Sequence record: NC_041917.1
Strand: one strand, 5' to 3'
DNA: 64,000 bases
Positions 2,210 through 20,151 of the stretch are shown piece by piece (within the stretch, counting starts at the first letter, position 1; each line of letters starts with the position of its first letter). The notes below the pieces were generated by a model that was given only the letters and a program-made list of their open reading frames with translations, was not told the DNA's origin and did not search any database. The position numbers and the translations under genes were made by a program.

Positions 2210-2335
2210 GTGGGGTTAGCTCAGTCTGGTAGAGCAGCGAAAGAAAAAACAATGGAATCTTGAAAAGGATTCTAACAGCATTATATCTTCTACTGTAAAT
2301 TCGCAGGTCGGTGAGTTCAAATCCACCATCCCACA
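2210..2335 (+). tRNA. tRNA-Tyr(GUA)-like gene interrupted by a ~51-nt insertion (2242-2292)
   Basis: Acceptor GTGGGGT/ATCCCAC; D-arm GCTC..GAGC; GCGAA|CTGTAAA-TTCGC after removal; short variable loop and bulged T-stem are atypical. Confidence 0.75.
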
Positions 2336-2408
2336 CAAATTTGTCTTGACATGGTGTATCCTGTGTGTTATATTACTATCATCAATTAAACGAGATAGGA
2401 TTTAAATT

Positions 2409-3412: not shown

Positions 3413-3537
3413 GGCGAGTTAGCTCAGTTGGTAGAGCACGTAGAAACCCAAGATTCAAGTACTTGAATCTTACAGCAACAATAACTCATACACTTTTAAT
3501 GTCGTGGTCGTTGGTTCGAATCCAACACTCGCCGCCA
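3413..3537 (+). tRNA. tRNA-Lys(UUU) interrupted by a 49-nt insertion (3441-3489)
   Basis: Acceptor GGCGAGT/ACTCGCC plus G-CCA; CG|ACA-CTTTTAA-TGTCG after removal; T-arm GTTGG-TTCGAAT-CCAAC. Confidence 0.9.
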
Positions 3538-7406: not shown

Positions 7407-7523
7407 GGAATCTTACAGCAAAAATACTAATTTTTGATGAAAACGAAACGACGAGGTTCGAATCCTCACCCACGAATTGCCTTATTATTAGTGGGAGCAC
7501 GGTGCTGGATAAACAAAGATTCC
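7407..7523 (+). ncRNA. ACAGCA element bracketing a degenerate permuted tRNA (Ile GAU-like)
   Basis: GGAATCTT-ACAGCA ... AAGATTCC; GAGG-TTCGAAT-CCTC precedes CCCAC..GTGGG. Confidence 0.7.
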
Positions 7524-7706: not shown

Positions 7707-7824
7707 GAAATCTCACAGCAAACAAAACAATTTTTTTCCTTGCATAGAAAAACGGTGGGGTTCGATTCCCCAACATCCAAGTTGCTTTTAGGATGTGTCT
7801 GGAAGGCCGTATGACAAAGATTTC
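7707..7824 (+). ncRNA. ACAGCA element bracketing a degenerate permuted tRNA (Ala UGC-like)
   Basis: GAAATCT-C-ACAGCA ... AGATTTC; CTTGCAT loop, GGGG-TTCGATT-CCCC, ACATCC..GGATGT. Confidence 0.7.
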
Positions 7825-8074: not shown

Positions 8075-8079
8075 CTAAA

Positions 8080-8192
8080 GGATTCGCACAGCAACAATAA
8101 AATCTTAAAATTCAATTGGTGAAAACAACCTTGCAGTTCGATTCTGCTTCCACAATGTGTGGATCTGGTGATGGATAGAAAAAACCGAATCC
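8080..8192 (+). ncRNA. ACAGCA element bracketing a highly degenerate permuted tRNA
   Basis: GGATTCG-C-ACAGCA ... AGAAA..CGAATCC; GCAG-TTCGATT-CTGC then TCCAC-AATGT-GTGGA. Confidence 0.65.
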
Positions 8193-8231
8193 TGATTTTA
8201 ATTAAGAAGTACTAAAGAATTTGATACACAC

Positions 8232-8384
8232 GGATTTATACAGCAAACATAATCCTAAAATAAAACATACGATAATGTTACTAACTCGGAATTCGTTCCC
8301 TTCGTTAGTACTTGGCAACTTGGGTACTTAAATAAGTTGTATCACCTCACGTGTATCGGATTAGAGGTGATTATAAATAAATCC
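8232..8384 (+). ncRNA. ACAGCA element with multi-hairpin cargo
   Basis: GGATTTAT-ACAGCA ... ATAAATCC; internal GGAA-TTCG-TTCC, CAACTT/AAGTTG, ATCACCTC/GAGGTGAT. Confidence 0.65.
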
Positions 8385-8929: not shown

Positions 8930-8986
8930 GGAATCTAGCAGCAACCATAACCCAATCAAACTTTTAATTTGACAATTATGGATTCC
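8930..8986 (+). ncRNA. ACAGCA element carrying an isolated Lys(UUU) anticodon stem-loop
   Basis: GGAATCT-A-GCAGCA ... TCAAA-CTTTTAA-TTTGA ... GGATTCC. Confidence 0.75.
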
Positions 8987-9667: not shown

Positions 9668-10354
9668 ATGTCAAAAAAGACTGATAAAGAAGTAAAAGAT
9701 ACAAAAGAAAAGTACACTGTTGTTAAACACGGCTCACTAACACTAGTGAATACACCAACAGTAAAAACTTTCTATATGAATGGTTCTATTGATCATCCTA
9801 CATTAACTAAGTTCCAAAAGTTCTTAGAAGATACATGTACGGAAAATAATAAAATTGATACCGAAGAAACTGAACGCAAAGAAAAGGATGAATTTAAAAA
9901 GATTCATGATCCTGAATCTAAGCCAGAGTTTGTTCCTGCTAAACGTAAAGTTGAGCGTATCAATCTGGTTATCAATAGTGGTGGTGGTTTAGTTGCAGTA
10001 ATGCTAGAAGTTGTAGCACTAATGAAAACTTCACCAATTCCAATTGATACCTACTGTTTTGGTTCTGCAATGAGTGCAGCTTTCTTTATCTTCTTACATG
10101 GCAAACGCCGTTTTGTTGGTGAAGGTGCCTCATTTATGACACATAGCATTGGTGCTATGGCATGGGATAATGTACCAAACATGACAATTCGTATGGAGTA
10201 CTTGGTTAAACAAAACGAGTACGCACAACAGGAAATTGCTAAACGTACTGGAATTCCTCTTGAAAAATTAAAAGAGAAAGAACATCTCGATTGGTACTTG
10301 ACTGCTGAAGAAGCGTTAGATGTTAAAATCGGTGAATATTTGATCCGAGATTAA
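9668..10354 (+). CDS. clpP: ClpP-like serine protease
   Basis: INSGGG, AMSAA (catalytic Ser), MTHS (His), DWYLTAEEA. Confidence 0.85.
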   Translation: MSKKTDKEVKDTKEKYTVVKHGSLTLVNTPTVKTFYMNGSIDHPTLTKFQKFLEDTCTENNKIDTEETERKEKDEFKKIHDPESKPEFVPAKRKVERINLVINSGGGLVAVMLEVVALMKTSPIPIDTYCFGSAMSAAFFIFLHGKRRFVGEGASFMTHSIGAMAWDNVPNMTIRMEYLVKQNEYAQQEIAKRTGIPLEKLKEKEHLDWYLTAEEALDVKIGEYLIRD

Positions 10355-10634: not shown

Positions 10635-11015
10635 ATGTATACAACGGTTAATCATGCTGATATAATTGATGATATTATAACTGAAATACTTGAAATTTAT
10701 ACATGTCGAGTTGAAATTTATAAAGATGGTCATTTATTCACTCAGTACGGGTATAATACTAAACATAATGTGAATTATCATATAAATGTAAAGTACTATA
10801 ATGATAATCCAAGTAATGGTGATAAAGCGAATAGCTTAATGGTAGAATTTAAATTTACCAATAGAGTTCCGAAGGGACTAAAAAATCATTACAAGTTATC
10901 TATACCTGAAATAACAAGTCTTACAGAAGAACGGCATTTTCAATTAATGTTTATCACTGATGATATGTATTTGGATTATGAAGTTATAAATAAATTACGT
11001 ACACATATTGTGTAA
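10635..11015 (+). CDS. hypothetical protein (EExxFQ family)
   Basis: EERHFQL motif. Confidence 0.7.
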   Translation: MYTTVNHADIIDDIITEILEIYTCRVEIYKDGHLFTQYGYNTKHNVNYHINVKYYNDNPSNGDKANSLMVEFKFTNRVPKGLKNHYKLSIPEITSLTEERHFQLMFITDDMYLDYEVINKLRTHIV

Positions 11016-11023
11016 AAAAGTTT

Positions 11024-11077
11024 TAGAATCTAACAGCAATCAAAACTCATTGGATATATGAAAAAAGATAGATTCTA
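11024..11077 (+). ncRNA. minimal ACAGCA element
   Basis: TAGAATCTA-ACAGCA ... TCAT-TGGATAT-ATGA ... TAGATTCTA. Confidence 0.75.
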
Positions 11078-11083
11078 GTATTT

Positions 11084-11156
11084 GGGAATATAATTCAGTT
11101 GGTAGAATGCTCGACCGATAATCGAGTCGCCGCTGGTTCGAGTCCAGCTATTCCCA
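11084..11156 (+). tRNA. tRNA-Ile(GAU)
   Basis: CTCGA-CCGATAA-TCGAG (C33 rather than U33). Confidence 0.9.
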
Positions 11157-11255
11157 CGAAGTAGTTCAGTACTGAAAAATGTACAGTGAAATTATTCAAC
11201 ACTATAGGTAGCACTTTGAATGAATCAGTAAGCCTATAAGTAACTACAATAAATT

Positions 11256-11384
11256 TGGAATTCAACAGCAATTCACTTACTAAAAACAGCTACCTCACGG
11301 TTTGTAGGTTCAAGTCCTACCTTGTACTTTCGAGTACATGTGGTGAAAATGGTAAACACGGCTGTCCAAAAGAAATGAATTCCA
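11256..11384 (+). tRNA. circularly permuted tRNA-Leu (probably UAA) inside an ACAGCA element
   Basis: 3' half (ACAGC, variable arm, T-arm, CTTGTAC) precedes TTTCGA linker and 5' half (GTACATG, D-arm, GCTGT). Confidence 0.85.
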
Positions 11385-11436
11385 GTATTAATTAAGACAT
11401 AAATATTCTTATACACTTTTTTGTAAGGATATAATT

Positions 11437-12036
11437 ATGGAAATGAAAAAGTTGATGGAAGATATTTCTGCCATCATGGAAGGACAACTACCTGGTTATT
11501 ATTATCATGGAAGTTCTGCCCCAATATCAAATTTTAGTGATGAGTTTGTTGGTAGAGGAAATGATGAATACGGTCCGGGAATATATTTTAGTTCAGTTCC
11601 AAATACTTCTATAGGTTATGCAAAAGATGGCGGTTCTAATGGAATGGTATATCAGTGCGAAATCAATTTAAGAAAAGAACTATCTAAAAAAACTAGAGTT
11701 AATAAAGCAGTACTATTAAAATTAATGCAAAATACACCTGATGAAGATGCATATACTAACTGGAATGAAAATAAAAATGTTGCTTATAGAACAGCATTAC
11801 AGGGTTATGTAGATGAAGGTAATATGTATGATGCGTTAATGGGTGTTTGGTACGATTGGTATAGAGAATATCCTGTTCAATTCGTGCGTTCACTAGTACA
11901 GTTAGGATATGATGGATACATATATACTTTTGCAAGCGGTGAACGTTTTATTATAGTATATAATCCAGCAAGTATAAAAGTTGTAAACACATTCAATCCA
12001 GAAGAAGCTATGCAGAAACTGATTGGAAGTGAATAA
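11437..12036 (+). CDS. ADP-ribosyltransferase-like protein
   Basis: YHGS ... GPGIYFS ... ERFIIVYNP pattern of ART-fold (ART-PolyVal-like) domains. Confidence 0.55.
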   Translation: MEMKKLMEDISAIMEGQLPGYYYHGSSAPISNFSDEFVGRGNDEYGPGIYFSSVPNTSIGYAKDGGSNGMVYQCEINLRKELSKKTRVNKAVLLKLMQNTPDEDAYTNWNENKNVAYRTALQGYVDEGNMYDALMGVWYDWYREYPVQFVRSLVQLGYDGYIYTFASGERFIIVYNPASIKVVNTFNPEEAMQKLIGSE

Positions 12037-12043
12037 TAAGATT

Positions 12044-12163
12044 TGGAATTCAACAGCAAATCATTCTAAACCCGTAGCATGTCGTAGGTTCAAGTCCTAC
12101 CAGTACTATCGAGTACTGTAGCTCAGTTGGTAGAGCAGCCACCTTAAAAAGAAATGAATTCCA
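12044..12163 (+). tRNA. circularly permuted class I tRNA inside an ACAGCA element (anticodon uncertain)
   Basis: GTAGC-ATGTC-T-arm-CAGTACT-ATCG-AGTACTG-TA-GCTCAGTTGGTAGAGC-A-GCCAC. Confidence 0.8.
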
Positions 12164-12194
12164 GTATTAATTAAAACAACATGAGTATAAATCA

Positions 12195-12644
12195 ATGTCT
12201 GATAAGCATCAATTTAAAGTAAACATCGGTGATTGGTCACAAGATGGTCATAATCAATATGATGTTTTAGTTCTTAACAGTACTAAACCAGTAGATGAAG
12301 TACAAAAAGCATTTAAAAAAGCTGCAACAGATTTACATTTACTAGTAAATGGTCGTTTTCTAATTGCAGATGAATTTGAAGATTGTAGTCTATCTGAAGA
12401 CCATGCAGAAGTTCTTAAAAATGCAGGTGTAAAATTTGATGATTTAGTGTATAATGATGGCGATGATGAAGAACCAAATTATATTATTGAAGGTTCAAGT
12501 GATATGACTATCCTAGTGATGCGTATCGCCCAACTTGAATTGGACTTTGAATTTGAAATTACGAATGATGCAATTCCGAACTTTAACGGGTTCTGGACAG
12601 AAGAACAAATGCCATCAATCGGATATGGTTTGTATAACATATAA
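12195..12644 (+). CDS. hypothetical protein
   Basis: ORF track. Confidence 0.75.
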   Translation: MSDKHQFKVNIGDWSQDGHNQYDVLVLNSTKPVDEVQKAFKKAATDLHLLVNGRFLIADEFEDCSLSEDHAEVLKNAGVKFDDLVYNDGDDEEPNYIIEGSSDMTILVMRIAQLELDFEFEITNDAIPNFNGFWTEEQMPSIGYGLYNI

Positions 12645-12653
12645 AACAAGTTT

Positions 12654-12718
12654 TGGAATCTAGCAGCACCCATAAAATGAAATCAACTGTTAATTGAAAA
12701 ATTCAAAAATGGATTCCA
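12654..12718 (+). ncRNA. ACAGCA element carrying an isolated Asn(GUU) anticodon stem-loop
   Basis: TGGAATCT-A-GCAGCA ... TCAA-CTGTTAA-TTGA ... GGATTCCA. Confidence 0.7.
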
Positions 12719-12738
12719 GCCTATTTCGGAGTAAAAAA

Positions 12739-13008
12739 ATGTATTATGCTCGATTAGAATATCCAAACAATGGATATGAGATTGAAAGAATACGTCTTAA
12801 AGCCTTAGATCGCAAAAAGTACTATCCAGTAGTTTCGATTGATATTGGTAGTTCAAGTACTCGCATATATCTTGAAGGTGATAAGAATGCATATAATAGT
12901 GTGAACTTTGAATTCTATACCAAACATGGTGATGAATATATTCTTGAAGATATTTTCGAAGACCCTGATTTAAACCCGTACTTGGATGATGATGACGAAG
13001 AATATTAA
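12739..13008 (+). CDS. hypothetical protein
   Basis: ATG 12739 after GGAG. Confidence 0.7.
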   Translation: MYYARLEYPNNGYEIERIRLKALDRKKYYPVVSIDIGSSSTRIYLEGDKNAYNSVNFEFYTKHGDEYILEDIFEDPDLNPYLDDDDEEY

Positions 13009-13265: not shown

Positions 13266-13320
13266 AAGAATCTAACAGCAATAAAAACTCATTCGATTAT
13301 ATGAAAAAAGATAGATTCTT
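13266..13320 (+). ncRNA. minimal ACAGCA element
   Basis: AAGAATCTA-ACAGCA ... TAGATTCTT; near copy of 11024-11077. Confidence 0.75.
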
Positions 13321-13549: not shown

Positions 13550-13631
13550 GCGGGATTAGCTCAGTGGTAGAGCACTTGCCTTCCAAGCAAGAGGCGAATA
13601 GGTTCCATCGGTTCGAATCCGATATTCCGCT
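13550..13631 (+). tRNA. tRNA-Gly(UCC) with 15-nt variable region
   Basis: CTTGC-CTTCCAA-GCAAG; U73. Confidence 0.9.
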
Positions 13632-13749
13632 CAAACTAAACAAACAATAAGGTGATTTTTATGCTATAGAATCCTAGTACTGGTCCTCCTAAAGAATTTA
13701 ATTCTGATATAAACAACTCAAAATTAAACTACTATAGGAAGAACATACC

Positions 13750-14084: not shown

Positions 14085-14141
14085 AAGAATCCAGCAGCAA
14101 CTAAAACTCATTCGCTTAATATGAAAAAGAAACGGATTCTT
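14085..14141 (+). ncRNA. minimal ACAGCA element
   Basis: AAGAATCC-A-GCAGCA ... AGAAA-C-GGATTCTT. Confidence 0.75.
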
Positions 14142-20064: not shown

Positions 20065-20151
20065 GGGTCGTTCACTCAGTTGGTTAGAGTACCGGACTTT
20101 TAATCCGGCGGGTATATCCCATCGAAGGTTCGAATCCTTCACGGCCTACCA
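20065..20151 (+). tRNA. tRNA-Lys(UUU) with long variable arm
   Basis: CCGGA-CTTTTAA-TCCGG then GGG-TATAT-CCC arm; CCA. Confidence 0.9.

What the first reader, a model, noticed from the sequence alone, without database searches (positions are those of the whole stretch)
12044..12163. Second permuted tRNA, sharing flanks and T-arm with the first but with a class I body
Seen: GTAGC-ATGTC-GTAGG-TTCAAGT-CCTAC-CAGTACT, ATCG linker, AGTACTG-TA-GCTCAGTTGGTAGAGC-A-GCCAC. The left flank (19 nt), right flank (28 nt, AAAAGAAATGAATTCCAGTATTAATTAA) and T-arm are identical to 11256-11384. The acceptor stem, D arm and variable region differ but stay paired. The anticodon cannot be assigned (CTTAAAA on the 5' side, TCT or AAACCC on the 3' side). 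Inference: the cargo was swapped within a duplicated cassette.
Basis: partly seen in the sequence, partly recalled or inferred. Interest (0 to 1): 0.75.

Follow-up and report, generated by a model that had tools for sequence, protein, structure and literature searches.

The report
tRNA-like Y RNA in jumbo phage
The "permuted tRNA" is really there as a sequence pattern, but it is most likely a tRNA-shaped non-coding RNA of the Y-RNA kind: one of about a dozen RNAs in this phage carrying a stem-plus-ACAGCAA handle that, across many phages, lies next to the gene for a Ro60-like RNA-binding protein.

Summary
The window is the last 64 kb of Serratia phage BF, a 357 kb jumbo phage.

**Observation: confirmed.** The order T arm, closed acceptor hairpin, D arm is present. 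So are the 19-nt and 28-nt flanks and the 17-nt T arm shared with 11256-11384.

**The flanks are not a private duplication.** They form a module: a closing stem, single-stranded ACAGCAA and an A-rich return strand. The module occurs 13 times in the window's tRNA region.

**Not a decoding tRNA.**
- The structure covaries across relatives (94.6% paired against 68% shuffled).
- No anticodon loop is conserved.
- The acceptor tip is not conserved.
- There is no BHB motif.

**Link to a Ro60-like protein.**
- BF encodes gp180 (Pfam DUF2828+DUF7788). Its predicted fold matches Ro60/TROVE over its full length.
- In 71 of 80 unrelated viral loci that encode a gp180 homologue, the same module lies on the gene's strand, mostly within 500 nt of the gene.
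- Some of those copies carry tRNA-like inserts. A mycobacteriophage has three in tandem.

**Best reading:** a YrlA-like tRNA mimic bound by the phage Ro-like protein. It has a new binding motif and is absent from Rfam at gathering score.

**Not shown:** binding, expression and function. The one read-mapping call was uninformative.

The parts
12043..12164 (+). Whole element B (the finding): closing stem, ACAGCAA motif, tRNA-like domain, A-rich return strand
   Evidence: CM R1 scores it 143 bits. Orthologues are present in GAP32, CBB, XbC2, Kaldavass and Yen9-03/04.
12044..12052 (+). Closing stem P1, 5' strand (pairs with 12155-12163)
   Evidence: RNAalifold gives 9 pairs; the two innermost vary and stay paired, one through changes on both sides. 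Helix 1 is 95.7% paired across 25 sequences.
12053..12059 (+). Single-stranded ACAGCAA, the family's conserved motif
   Evidence: CAGCA is invariant in alignments A2 and A6. The position profile comes from 203 elements; their CAGCA core is fixed by the search pattern.
12064..12066 (+). Short helix P1b, TTC (pairs with GAA 12151-12153)
   Evidence: RNAalifold, with changes on both sides. Helix 2 is 88% paired.
12074..12078 (+). Anticodon-stem-like helix, 3' strand GTAGC (pairs with GCCAC 12138-12142; A12076 opposite C12140 is a conserved mismatch)
   Evidence: Covaries: BF GCCAC/GTAGC, GAP32 GTCGC/GCAAC, XbC2 GCCGC/GCAGC, CBB GCAGC/GCTGC.
12084..12100 (+). T arm (GTAGG-TTCAAGT-CCTAC)
   Evidence: Helix 5 is 99% paired.
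12101..12118 (+). Acceptor-like stem closed by the 4-nt loop ATCG
   Evidence: The tip is not conserved among orthologues.
12121..12136 (+). D arm (GCTC-AGTTGGTA-GAGC), with the G18 G19 equivalents
12143..12154 (+). A-rich return strand of the internal loop
   Evidence: A makes up 58-80% of the six positions before the 3' stem strand in 203 elements.
12155..12163 (+). Closing stem P1, 3' strand
11255..11385 (+). Sister element A: same module, tRNA-like domain with a long variable arm
   Evidence: R1 scores it 65 bits.
7407..7523 (+). Module RNA with another T-arm-containing insert
7707..7824 (+). Module RNA with another T-arm-containing insert
8079..8193 (+). Module RNA with a T-arm plus minihelix insert
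8232..8384 (+). Module RNA with a 150-nt insert of unknown kind
8930..8986 (+). Short module RNA (no tRNA-like insert)
11024..11077 (+). Short module RNA ending 7 nt before tRNA-Ile
13266..13320 (+). Short module RNA ending 7 nt before tRNA-Gln
14085..14141 (+). Short module RNA
3413..3537 (+). 'Closed' form: normal-order tRNA-Lys(UUU)-like gene with the module (stem capped by a loop) inserted between positions 28 and 29 of the anticodon stem
2210..2336 (+). 'Closed' form: normal-order tRNA-like gene (anticodon loop CTGTAAA) with the module inserted 5' of the loop
1764..1880 (+). 'Closed' form with variant motif ACGGCAT

Best explanation
Positions 12043-12164 encode a structured non-coding RNA of the Y-RNA kind, not a decoding tRNA.

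**Anatomy (shown):**
- The 5' and 3' ends pair into a 9-bp closing stem.
- Next comes an asymmetric internal loop. Its 5' strand starts with the conserved single-stranded ACAGCAA. Its 3' strand is A-rich.
- Beyond the loop sits a tRNA-shaped domain: a 5-position anticodon-like stem, a 5-nt variable region, a T arm, an acceptor-like stem closed by a loop, and a D arm.
- All the nucleotides needed for the tRNA elbow are kept.
- This is the architecture of bacterial YrlA.

**Mechanism (inferred):**
- The stem-plus-ACAGCAA module is the handle by which the RNA is bound by the phage's own Ro60-like protein, gp180 (DUF2828+DUF7788; a TROVE-like ring plus a vWA domain). The gp180 gene lies beside an RNA ligase gene elsewhere in the genome.
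- The tRNA-shaped domain then presents a tRNA look-alike to tRNA-handling enzymes or tRNA-targeting nucleases.
- The particle would work in tRNA or RNA repair, quality control or counter-defence, alongside the phage's Rnl1, Pnkp, second ligase, RlaP and CCA-adding enzymes.
- The RNA is probably cut out of the long plus-strand tRNA/ORF transcripts by tRNA-processing enzymes.

**Status of each step:** sequence, structure, covariation, the protein's fold and the genomic association are shown. Binding, processing and function are inferred.
For: **RNA structure.**
- Six orthologues give 32 consensus pairs, 6 of them with compensatory changes.
- Across 25 CM-aligned sequences from unrelated phages, 94.6% of cells are paired against 68% in shuffles. 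29 of 32 pairs change on both sides. Slid controls give 32-45%.
- Rfam YrlA (RF02553) matches the T/acceptor/D part at 40.3 bits, E = 8e-6 over 26 kb.

**Module.**
- There are 13 copies on the + strand of the window's tRNA region.
- None was found in the first 150 kb of the genome.

**Protein.**
- gp180 carries Pfam DUF2828+DUF7788 and an invariant MIDAS motif DxSxS.
- The AlphaFold model has pLDDT 90.6.
- Its top 11 PDB matches are all Ro60/TROVE over the full length, E = 1e-9 to 2e-6, TM up to 0.58. They include the phage phiRo60 structure 9KOP.
- Homologues are annotated 'Ro-like RNA binding protein'.

**Association.**
- In 80 viral loci chosen only for a gp180 homologue, module matches number 188 on the gene's strand (71 loci). 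The other strand has 55, and shuffles average 54.7.
- Under the stricter 7-bp criterion, 62 of 134 matches lie within 500 nt upstream of the gene and 29 within 500 nt downstream.
- A CM built only from the BF-group orthologues finds full-length tRNA-like matches in about a dozen such loci, all on the gene's strand.
- L058 has such an RNA about 260 nt upstream of the gene.
- Mycobacteriophage Clautastrophe has three module RNAs in tandem right after its Ro-like gene.

**Precedent.**
- YrlA RNAs lie next to Ro60 (PMC4201824).
- Thermus phage phiRo60 binds two Y-like RNAs (PMC12135203).
- Bas63 gp130 is Ro60-like, lies beside tRNA genes and counters a defence system (10.1101/2024.10.10.617714).
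Against: - There is no evidence here that the RNA is made, or that it binds gp180. The only runs holding the sequence were low-depth contigs.
- The canonical Ro-binding motif GNCGAAN0-1G is absent.
- The Rfam YrlA score is below the gathering score (40.3 against 69).
- In BF the gp180 gene lies about 200 kb from the RNAs.
- The same module inside normal-order tRNA genes looks intron-like. This leaves room for a processing role.
- The association was tested only from protein to RNA. The reverse scan was swamped by chance matches.
- The CM alignment used for pair counts leans towards the model's structure.
Confidence: 0.72

Rival explanations
1. A true circularly permuted tRNA gene. The transcript's ends are joined, for example by the phage Pnkp/Rnl1 or the second ligase. 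The acceptor loop is then opened by RNase P and 3' trimming, CCA is added, and a decoding tRNA results.
For: - The tRNA core is perfect and in permuted order.
- The phage encodes Rnl1, Pnkp, a second RNA ligase and a CCA-adding enzyme.
- The same module interrupts normal-order tRNA genes that keep a proper anticodon hairpin.
- After un-permutation ARAGORN calls a tRNA with an 'intron'.
Against: - The anticodon differs among orthologues: taa, ata, aac or none.
- The joining regions are 14 nt on each side, without a BHB motif.
- The acceptor tip is not conserved. XbC2 and Kaldavass have no linker or discriminator, Yen9 has a 6-bp stem with a 6-nt loop, and CBB has an insert of about 40 nt.
- Short 'empty' modules and modules with non-tRNA inserts cannot give tRNAs.
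- No endonuclease is known for this.
Confidence: 0.06
2. The module is a processing signal rather than a stable protein handle. The Ro-like protein, with a nuclease and the neighbouring ligase, cuts at both edges of the internal loop and reseals. That would splice the 'closed' tRNA genes and circularise the 'open' ones such as this locus.
For: - The closed forms keep an anticodon stem that covaries across the insertion: BF ACA/TGT, GAP32 AGC/GCT and CCA/TGG, with the loop CTTTTAA.
- A ligase gene sits beside gp180.
- The closed forms at 3413-3537 and in L185/L205 encode CCA.
Against: - No conserved cleavage-site structure was found.
- Open forms lack an anticodon hairpin to restore.
- The closed-form tRNAs duplicate anticodons also carried by ordinary genes in the window, Lys-ttt and Tyr-gta.
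- Nothing is known of such an activity for Ro60 proteins.
Confidence: 0.12
3. The module is a cis-acting leader or trailer of the tRNA/ORF transcripts, serving stability, processing or autoregulation. The tRNA-like insert has no role of its own.
For: - Short modules often sit 30-85 nt upstream of the DUF2828 start codon.
- They often sit 5-15 nt upstream of tRNA genes.
- No private promoter or terminator was found here.
Against: - The tRNA-like domain is conserved, with covariation, in distant phages.
- In BF the copies lie far from the protein gene.
Confidence: 0.07
4. A decaying relic of two adjacent tRNA genes, or of a rearranged tRNA gene, with no function.
For: BLAST with the element also hits junctions between neighbouring tRNA genes in other phages.
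Against: - The acceptor strands pair with each other.
- All helices covary.
- The element is kept in 18 phage records and in unrelated contigs.
Confidence: 0.02

Closest known systems
YrlA, the tRNA-like bacterial Y RNA (Rfam RF02553; Chen et al. 2014, PMC4201824)
   Same: - The 5'/3' stem encloses an internal loop and a tRNA-like domain in the order variable region, T arm, closed acceptor-like stem, D arm.
- The genome also encodes a Ro60-fold protein.
- Shorter relatives lacking the tRNA-like domain exist, as YrlB does for YrlA.
   Different: - The conserved motif is ACAGCAA, not GNCGAAN0-1G.
- The Rfam score is 40.3 bits, against a gathering score of 69.
- The partner protein hits Pfam DUF2828+DUF7788, not TROVE.
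- There are many copies per genome, embedded in the tRNA gene cluster.
- In BF the RNAs are not next to the protein gene.
Thermus phage phiLo phiRo60 with Yrl1 and Yrl2 (PMC12135203; PDB 9KOP, 9L5Y)
   Same: - A phage-encoded Ro60-fold protein has phage-encoded partner RNAs built from a terminal stem and an internal bulge.
- 9KOP is the best Foldseek match of gp180.
   Different: - The phiLo RNAs carry the CGAA motif, and binding was shown experimentally.
- Here the motif differs and binding is untested.
Circularly permuted tRNA genes of Cyanidioschyzon merolae and other algae (my own knowledge of Soma et al. 2007)
   Same: The 3' half comes before the 5' half, and the acceptor strands are joined by a few nucleotides.
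   Different: - Those have a BHB motif at the ends and a restorable anticodon loop.
- They pass through a circular intermediate and yield a working tRNA.
- None of these is supported here.
Bas63 gp130, a Ro60-like protein upstream of tRNA genes (preprint 10.1101/2024.10.10.617714)
   Same: - A Ro60-like phage protein lies beside a tRNA array.
- The authors suggest that some annotated tRNAs may be Y RNAs.
- SUSP1, of the same subfamily of phages, has a gp180 homologue followed by module RNAs.
   Different: - No RNA motif or structure was described there.
- I did not verify that gp130 itself is a DUF2828 protein.

Membership tests
Circularly permuted tRNA gene (C. merolae type) | The 3' half precedes the 5' half, and the acceptor strands are adjacent and complementary | tested here: met
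   CAGTACT-ATCG-AGTACTG lies between the T arm and the D arm.
Circularly permuted tRNA gene (C. merolae type) | The transcript ends fold into a bulge-helix-bulge motif at the future anticodon loop | tested here: not met
   a 9-bp stem, a 3-bp helix and unpaired stretches of 7-11 nt. There are no two 3-nt bulges around a 4-bp helix.
Circularly permuted tRNA gene (C. merolae type) | Joining restores a 7-nt anticodon loop with an anticodon kept among orthologues | tested here: not met
   taa, ata, aac or none among six orthologues.
Circularly permuted tRNA gene (C. merolae type) | The acceptor end is processable: a 7-bp stem, a discriminator and a linker are kept | tested here: not met
   no linker in XbC2 and Kaldavass; a 6-bp stem with a 6-nt loop in Yen9; an insert of about 40 nt in CBB.
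Circularly permuted tRNA gene (C. merolae type) | A circular RNA intermediate and a mature tRNA | not testable with these tools
   only low-depth contigs of two runs, with no joints.
YrlA / bacterial Y RNA | A terminal stem plus a tRNA-like domain (V, T, closed AS, D) | tested here: met
YrlA / bacterial Y RNA | Reaches the Rfam RF02553 gathering score | tested here: not met
   40.3 bits against 69, and only model positions 24-84 are matched.
YrlA / bacterial Y RNA | The GNCGAAN0-1G motif near the 5' end (PMC4201824) | tested here: not met
   ACAGCAA stands at that place, and the 5' part has no CGAA.
YrlA / bacterial Y RNA | A Ro60 orthologue encoded in the genome, usually adjacent | tested here: inconclusive
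   A Ro60-fold protein, gp180, is encoded, but about 200 kb away in BF. The RNAs are adjacent to the gene in other phages.
YrlA / bacterial Y RNA | Bound by Ro60 | not testable with these tools
   Needs pull-down or gel shift.
Ro60/TROVE proteins (for gp180) | A ring of helical repeats plus a vWA domain with a MIDAS motif | tested here: met
   DxSxS is invariant, and the top 11 Foldseek matches are Ro60/TROVE over the full length.
Ro60/TROVE proteins (for gp180) | Matches Pfam TROVE (PF05731) | tested here: not met
   DUF2828 and DUF7788 only. One related Atlas cluster has TROVE in 16% of its members.

The most novel reading that the evidence does not exclude
The stem-plus-ACAGCAA module marks RNAs for a protein-only cut-and-rejoin pathway run by the Ro-like protein, an unknown nuclease and the phage RNA ligases. 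tRNA genes interrupted by the module would be spliced, and 'open' forms such as this locus would be circularised. That would be the first intron-like, permuted-tRNA-type processing system in bacteria or phages.
Probability: 0.1. Interest if true: 0.9.

Novelty: new variant of a known kind. Interest (0 to 1): 0.62.

Why it matters
- Ro60-Y RNA particles are known in animals, in bacteria and in one phage studied biochemically.
- Here a very large phage protein family has the Ro60 fold: more than 7,500 homologues in the protein search (a lower bound) and 710 phage records.
- Its likely partner RNAs share a motif (stem plus ACAGCAA) that no Rfam family matches at gathering score.
- That gives a concrete, testable RNA ligand for proteins annotated only as 'RNA-binding' or 'hypothetical'.
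- It explains odd 'tRNA-like', 'tRNA-OTHER' and over-long tRNA calls in phage tRNA clusters.
- It links these loci to tRNA repair and anti-defence. One family-like protein, Bas63 gp130, already counters a defence system.
- The module's presence inside otherwise normal tRNA genes is unexplained and may point to new RNA processing.

Tried and rejected
- **Public reads.** Two runs held parts of the stretch, but only as low-depth contigs. There were no joints and no transcript ends.
- **Known ribozymes and RNA families.** The Rfam E-value scan of 26 kb gave only tRNA and a sub-threshold YrlA hit.
- **BHB motif.** Looked for by eye and with RNAalifold; none found.
- **A Ro gene in mycobacteriophage Bxz1 as a probe.** The stretch I fetched did not contain it.
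- **Sequence search of gp180 against PDB.** Nothing significant. The fold search was needed.
- **Reverse test, from RNA motif to protein.** The 15 'complete' hits were chance matches inside coding DNA. This is uninformative, not negative.
- **RNAalifold on 52 short forms.** It gave no structure. The sequences are AU-rich, and MAFFT shifted the register between groups.
- **Papers on ROT/TROVE systems.** Burroughs and Aravind 2016 and the Sim et al. 2020 review are not held, so prior description there cannot be excluded.
- **Private promoter or terminator.** None found.

Full report
**Where we are.** Window 11000-13000 is 100% identical to Serratia phage BF (KY630187/NC_041917) at 304154-306154. 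The window is therefore the last 64 kb of this 357 kb jumbo phage. Positions 1.7-26 kb hold a plus-strand array of tRNA genes and small ORFs.

- The identical blocks shared with the sister locus are exactly 19 nt (11253-11271 = 12041-12059) and 28 nt (11368-11395 = 12147-12174). The 17-nt T arm is also identical.
- The RNA folds far better than shuffles: z = -3.41, 0 of 200.
- ARAGORN and Rfam tRNA do not call it, as expected for a permuted order.

**The flanks are a family-wide module.**
- The left-flank 15-mer recurs 13 times at up to 3 mismatches, against 2.6 expected.
- A scan for 'stem strand + CAGCA(A/T) ... complementary strand' gave two sets on the + strand. Six are long forms: 7407-7523, 7707-7824, 8079-8193, 8232-8384, 11255-11385 and 12043-12164. 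Four are short forms of about 55 nt: 8930-8986, 11024-11077, 13266-13320 and 14085-14141.
- Three normal-order tRNA-like genes carry the same module with its stem capped by a loop, inserted in the anticodon arm: 1764-1880, 2210-2336 and 3413-3537.
- The first 150 kb of the genome has no copy.

**Comparison with relatives.**
- The element is kept in 18 records of Eneladusvirus and Mimasvirus.
- Among six orthologues, RNAalifold gives the closing stem, a 3-bp helix, the anticodon-like stem, the T arm, the closed acceptor hairpin and the D arm. That is 32 pairs, 6 of them with compensatory changes.
- The anticodon-like stem covaries (GCCAC/GTAGC, GTCGC/GCAAC, GCCGC/GCAGC, GCAGC/GCTGC) and keeps an odd C-A mismatch in most.
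- What a tRNA would need is not kept. After artificial un-permutation, ARAGORN assigns taa, ata, aac or nothing.
- The acceptor tip ranges from a 4-nt loop to no linker at all, or to a 40-nt insert.
- There is no bulge-helix-bulge motif.
- The perfect flank identity of the two BF loci is shared with Yen9 but not with GAP32 or CBB. It reflects homogenisation in that lineage.

**A lead from Rfam.** The only non-tRNA family matching the locus is YrlA, the tRNA-like bacterial Y RNA. It scores 40.3 bits (gathering score 69) over the T arm, closed stem and D arm. YrlA has the same architecture, lies next to Ro60 genes, and carries GNCGAAN0-1G near its 5' end (PMC4201824). Here ACAGCAA stands at that place.

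**The phage has a Ro60-like protein.**
- BF gp180 (genome 101477-103003, annotated 'RNA-binding protein') follows an RNA ligase gene.
- It matches Pfam DUF2828 and DUF7788 and has an invariant DxSxS motif.
- It gives a confident model, pLDDT 90.6.
- The eleven best PDB matches of that model are all Ro60/TROVE proteins over their full length: Xenopus and human Ro60, Deinococcus Rsr, and the Thermus phage phiRo60 structure 9KOP. E-values run from 1e-9 to 2e-6.
- Homologues occur in 710 phage records, some named 'Ro-like RNA binding protein'.
- BF also encodes Rnl1, Pnkp, an RlaP nucleotidyltransferase, a CCA-adding enzyme and Thg1.

**The module travels with that protein.**
- I fetched 80 viral loci chosen only for a gp180 homologue.
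- Module matches number 188 on the gene's strand (71 loci). The opposite strand has 55, which equals the shuffle mean of 54.7.
- Under a stricter 7-bp stem criterion, 62 of 134 matches lie within 500 nt upstream of the gene and 29 within 500 nt downstream. 49 loci have one within 200 nt upstream or 300 nt downstream.
- The consensus is (U)AGGAU-N4-WY-CAGCAA ... A-rich ... N4-AUCCU(G).
- A covariance model built only from the six BF-group orthologues finds full-length matches, all on the gene's strand, in about a dozen of these unrelated loci.
- On 25 aligned sequences, 94.6% of cells pair against 68% in shuffles and 32-45% when partners are slid. 29 of 32 pairs change on both sides. The alignment is fitted to the model, so these counts lean towards the structure.
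- Individual cases. A 45 kb contig has a tRNA-like module RNA about 260 nt upstream of the gene. Coliphage SUSP1 has module RNAs after the gene, in its tRNA array. Mycobacteriophage Clautastrophe has three in tandem right after its 'Ro-like' gene, the middle one tRNA-like, at 39 bits on YrlA.
- No Rfam family reaches its gathering score on these RNAs.

**Interpretation.**
- The finding is a tRNA mimic of the Y-RNA kind. Its shared 'flanks' are the probable binding handle for the phage Ro60-like protein.
- Known precedents make this mechanistically ordinary. Ro60-Y RNA tethers PNPase in bacteria. phiRo60 binds two phage Y-like RNAs and host PNPase (PMC12135203). Bas63 gp130, which is Ro60-like and lies upstream of tRNA genes, counters the Ppl defence. 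Jumbo-phage ROT/TROVE proteins have been proposed as repair platforms with a tRNA-like partner (PMC7824862).
- Biogenesis from the tRNA array is plausible. 26 modules end 5-15 nt before a tRNA, and 21 start within 15 nt after one.
- Binding, expression and function remain inferred, because read data were uninformative.

**What stays open.**
- The module inside normal-order tRNA genes keeps a covarying anticodon stem and a proper loop across the insertion. This looks intron-like.
- Those genes duplicate anticodons that ordinary genes in the window also carry. They may therefore be chargeable mimics rather than needed decoders.
- Even so, a cut-and-rejoin pathway cannot be excluded.

Noticed in passing
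window 3413-3537, 2210-2336, 1764-1880; also L001:3023-3149 and 9811-9934, L185:2575-2693, L205:1345-1463: Normal-order tRNA-like genes are interrupted in the anticodon arm by the same stem-plus-ACAGCAA module. In the Lys(UUU) genes the insert sits between positions 28 and 29. The distal anticodon hairpin covaries and keeps the loop CTTTTAA. Other records annotate these as tRNAs of 114-127 nt, or as 'tRNA-OTHER'.
   Followed up: partly
window 11024-11077 and 13266-13320: Short module RNAs end 7 nt before tRNA-Ile and tRNA-Gln. Across all loci, 26 modules have a tRNA starting 5-15 nt downstream. RNase P cleavage could therefore set their 3' ends.
   Followed up: partly
window 11437-12036 (+): The ORF between the two tRNA-like RNAs is an ADP-ribosyltransferase of the ART-PolyVal family (Pfam E = 1.8e-11). 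It is conserved at this place in GAP32 and CBB.
   Followed up: partly
window 20065-20151 and 13550-13632: tRNA-Lys(UUU) and tRNA-Gly(UCC) are 83-87 nt long because of an extra arm in the variable region. That is unusual for these class I tRNAs.
   Followed up: no
L137:4524-4687, L141:4357-4522, L192:2000-2228, L147:6572-6755 and similar: Beside DUF2828 genes, the same module also encloses conserved inserts of 100-240 nt that are not tRNA-like. These are several recurring classes of unknown nature.
   Followed up: no
window 12076 opposite 12140: A C-A mismatch in the middle of the anticodon-like stem is kept in BF, Yen9, GAP32, XbC2 and Kaldavass. It appears as A-C in the unrelated L114. CBB has A-U there.
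   Followed up: no
window 12108 and 12167 (run X1): One public contig carries the element with A>T in the hairpin loop, then runs on into unrelated A-rich sequence after 12167. It is probably a relative with a different downstream neighbour.
   Followed up: no
L114:4162-4492: A phage contig with a tRNA-like module RNA also encodes a tmRNA and several tRNAs close by.
   Followed up: no
BF genome 57227-57673 (L009:7227-7670), outside the window: The gene annotated 'RNA ligase' (gp110, 148 aa) matches the anti-CBASS phosphodiesterase family Acb1 rather than a ligase.
   Followed up: no
window 9668-10354 (+): A ClpP-like protease ORF sits inside the tRNA region.
   Followed up: no
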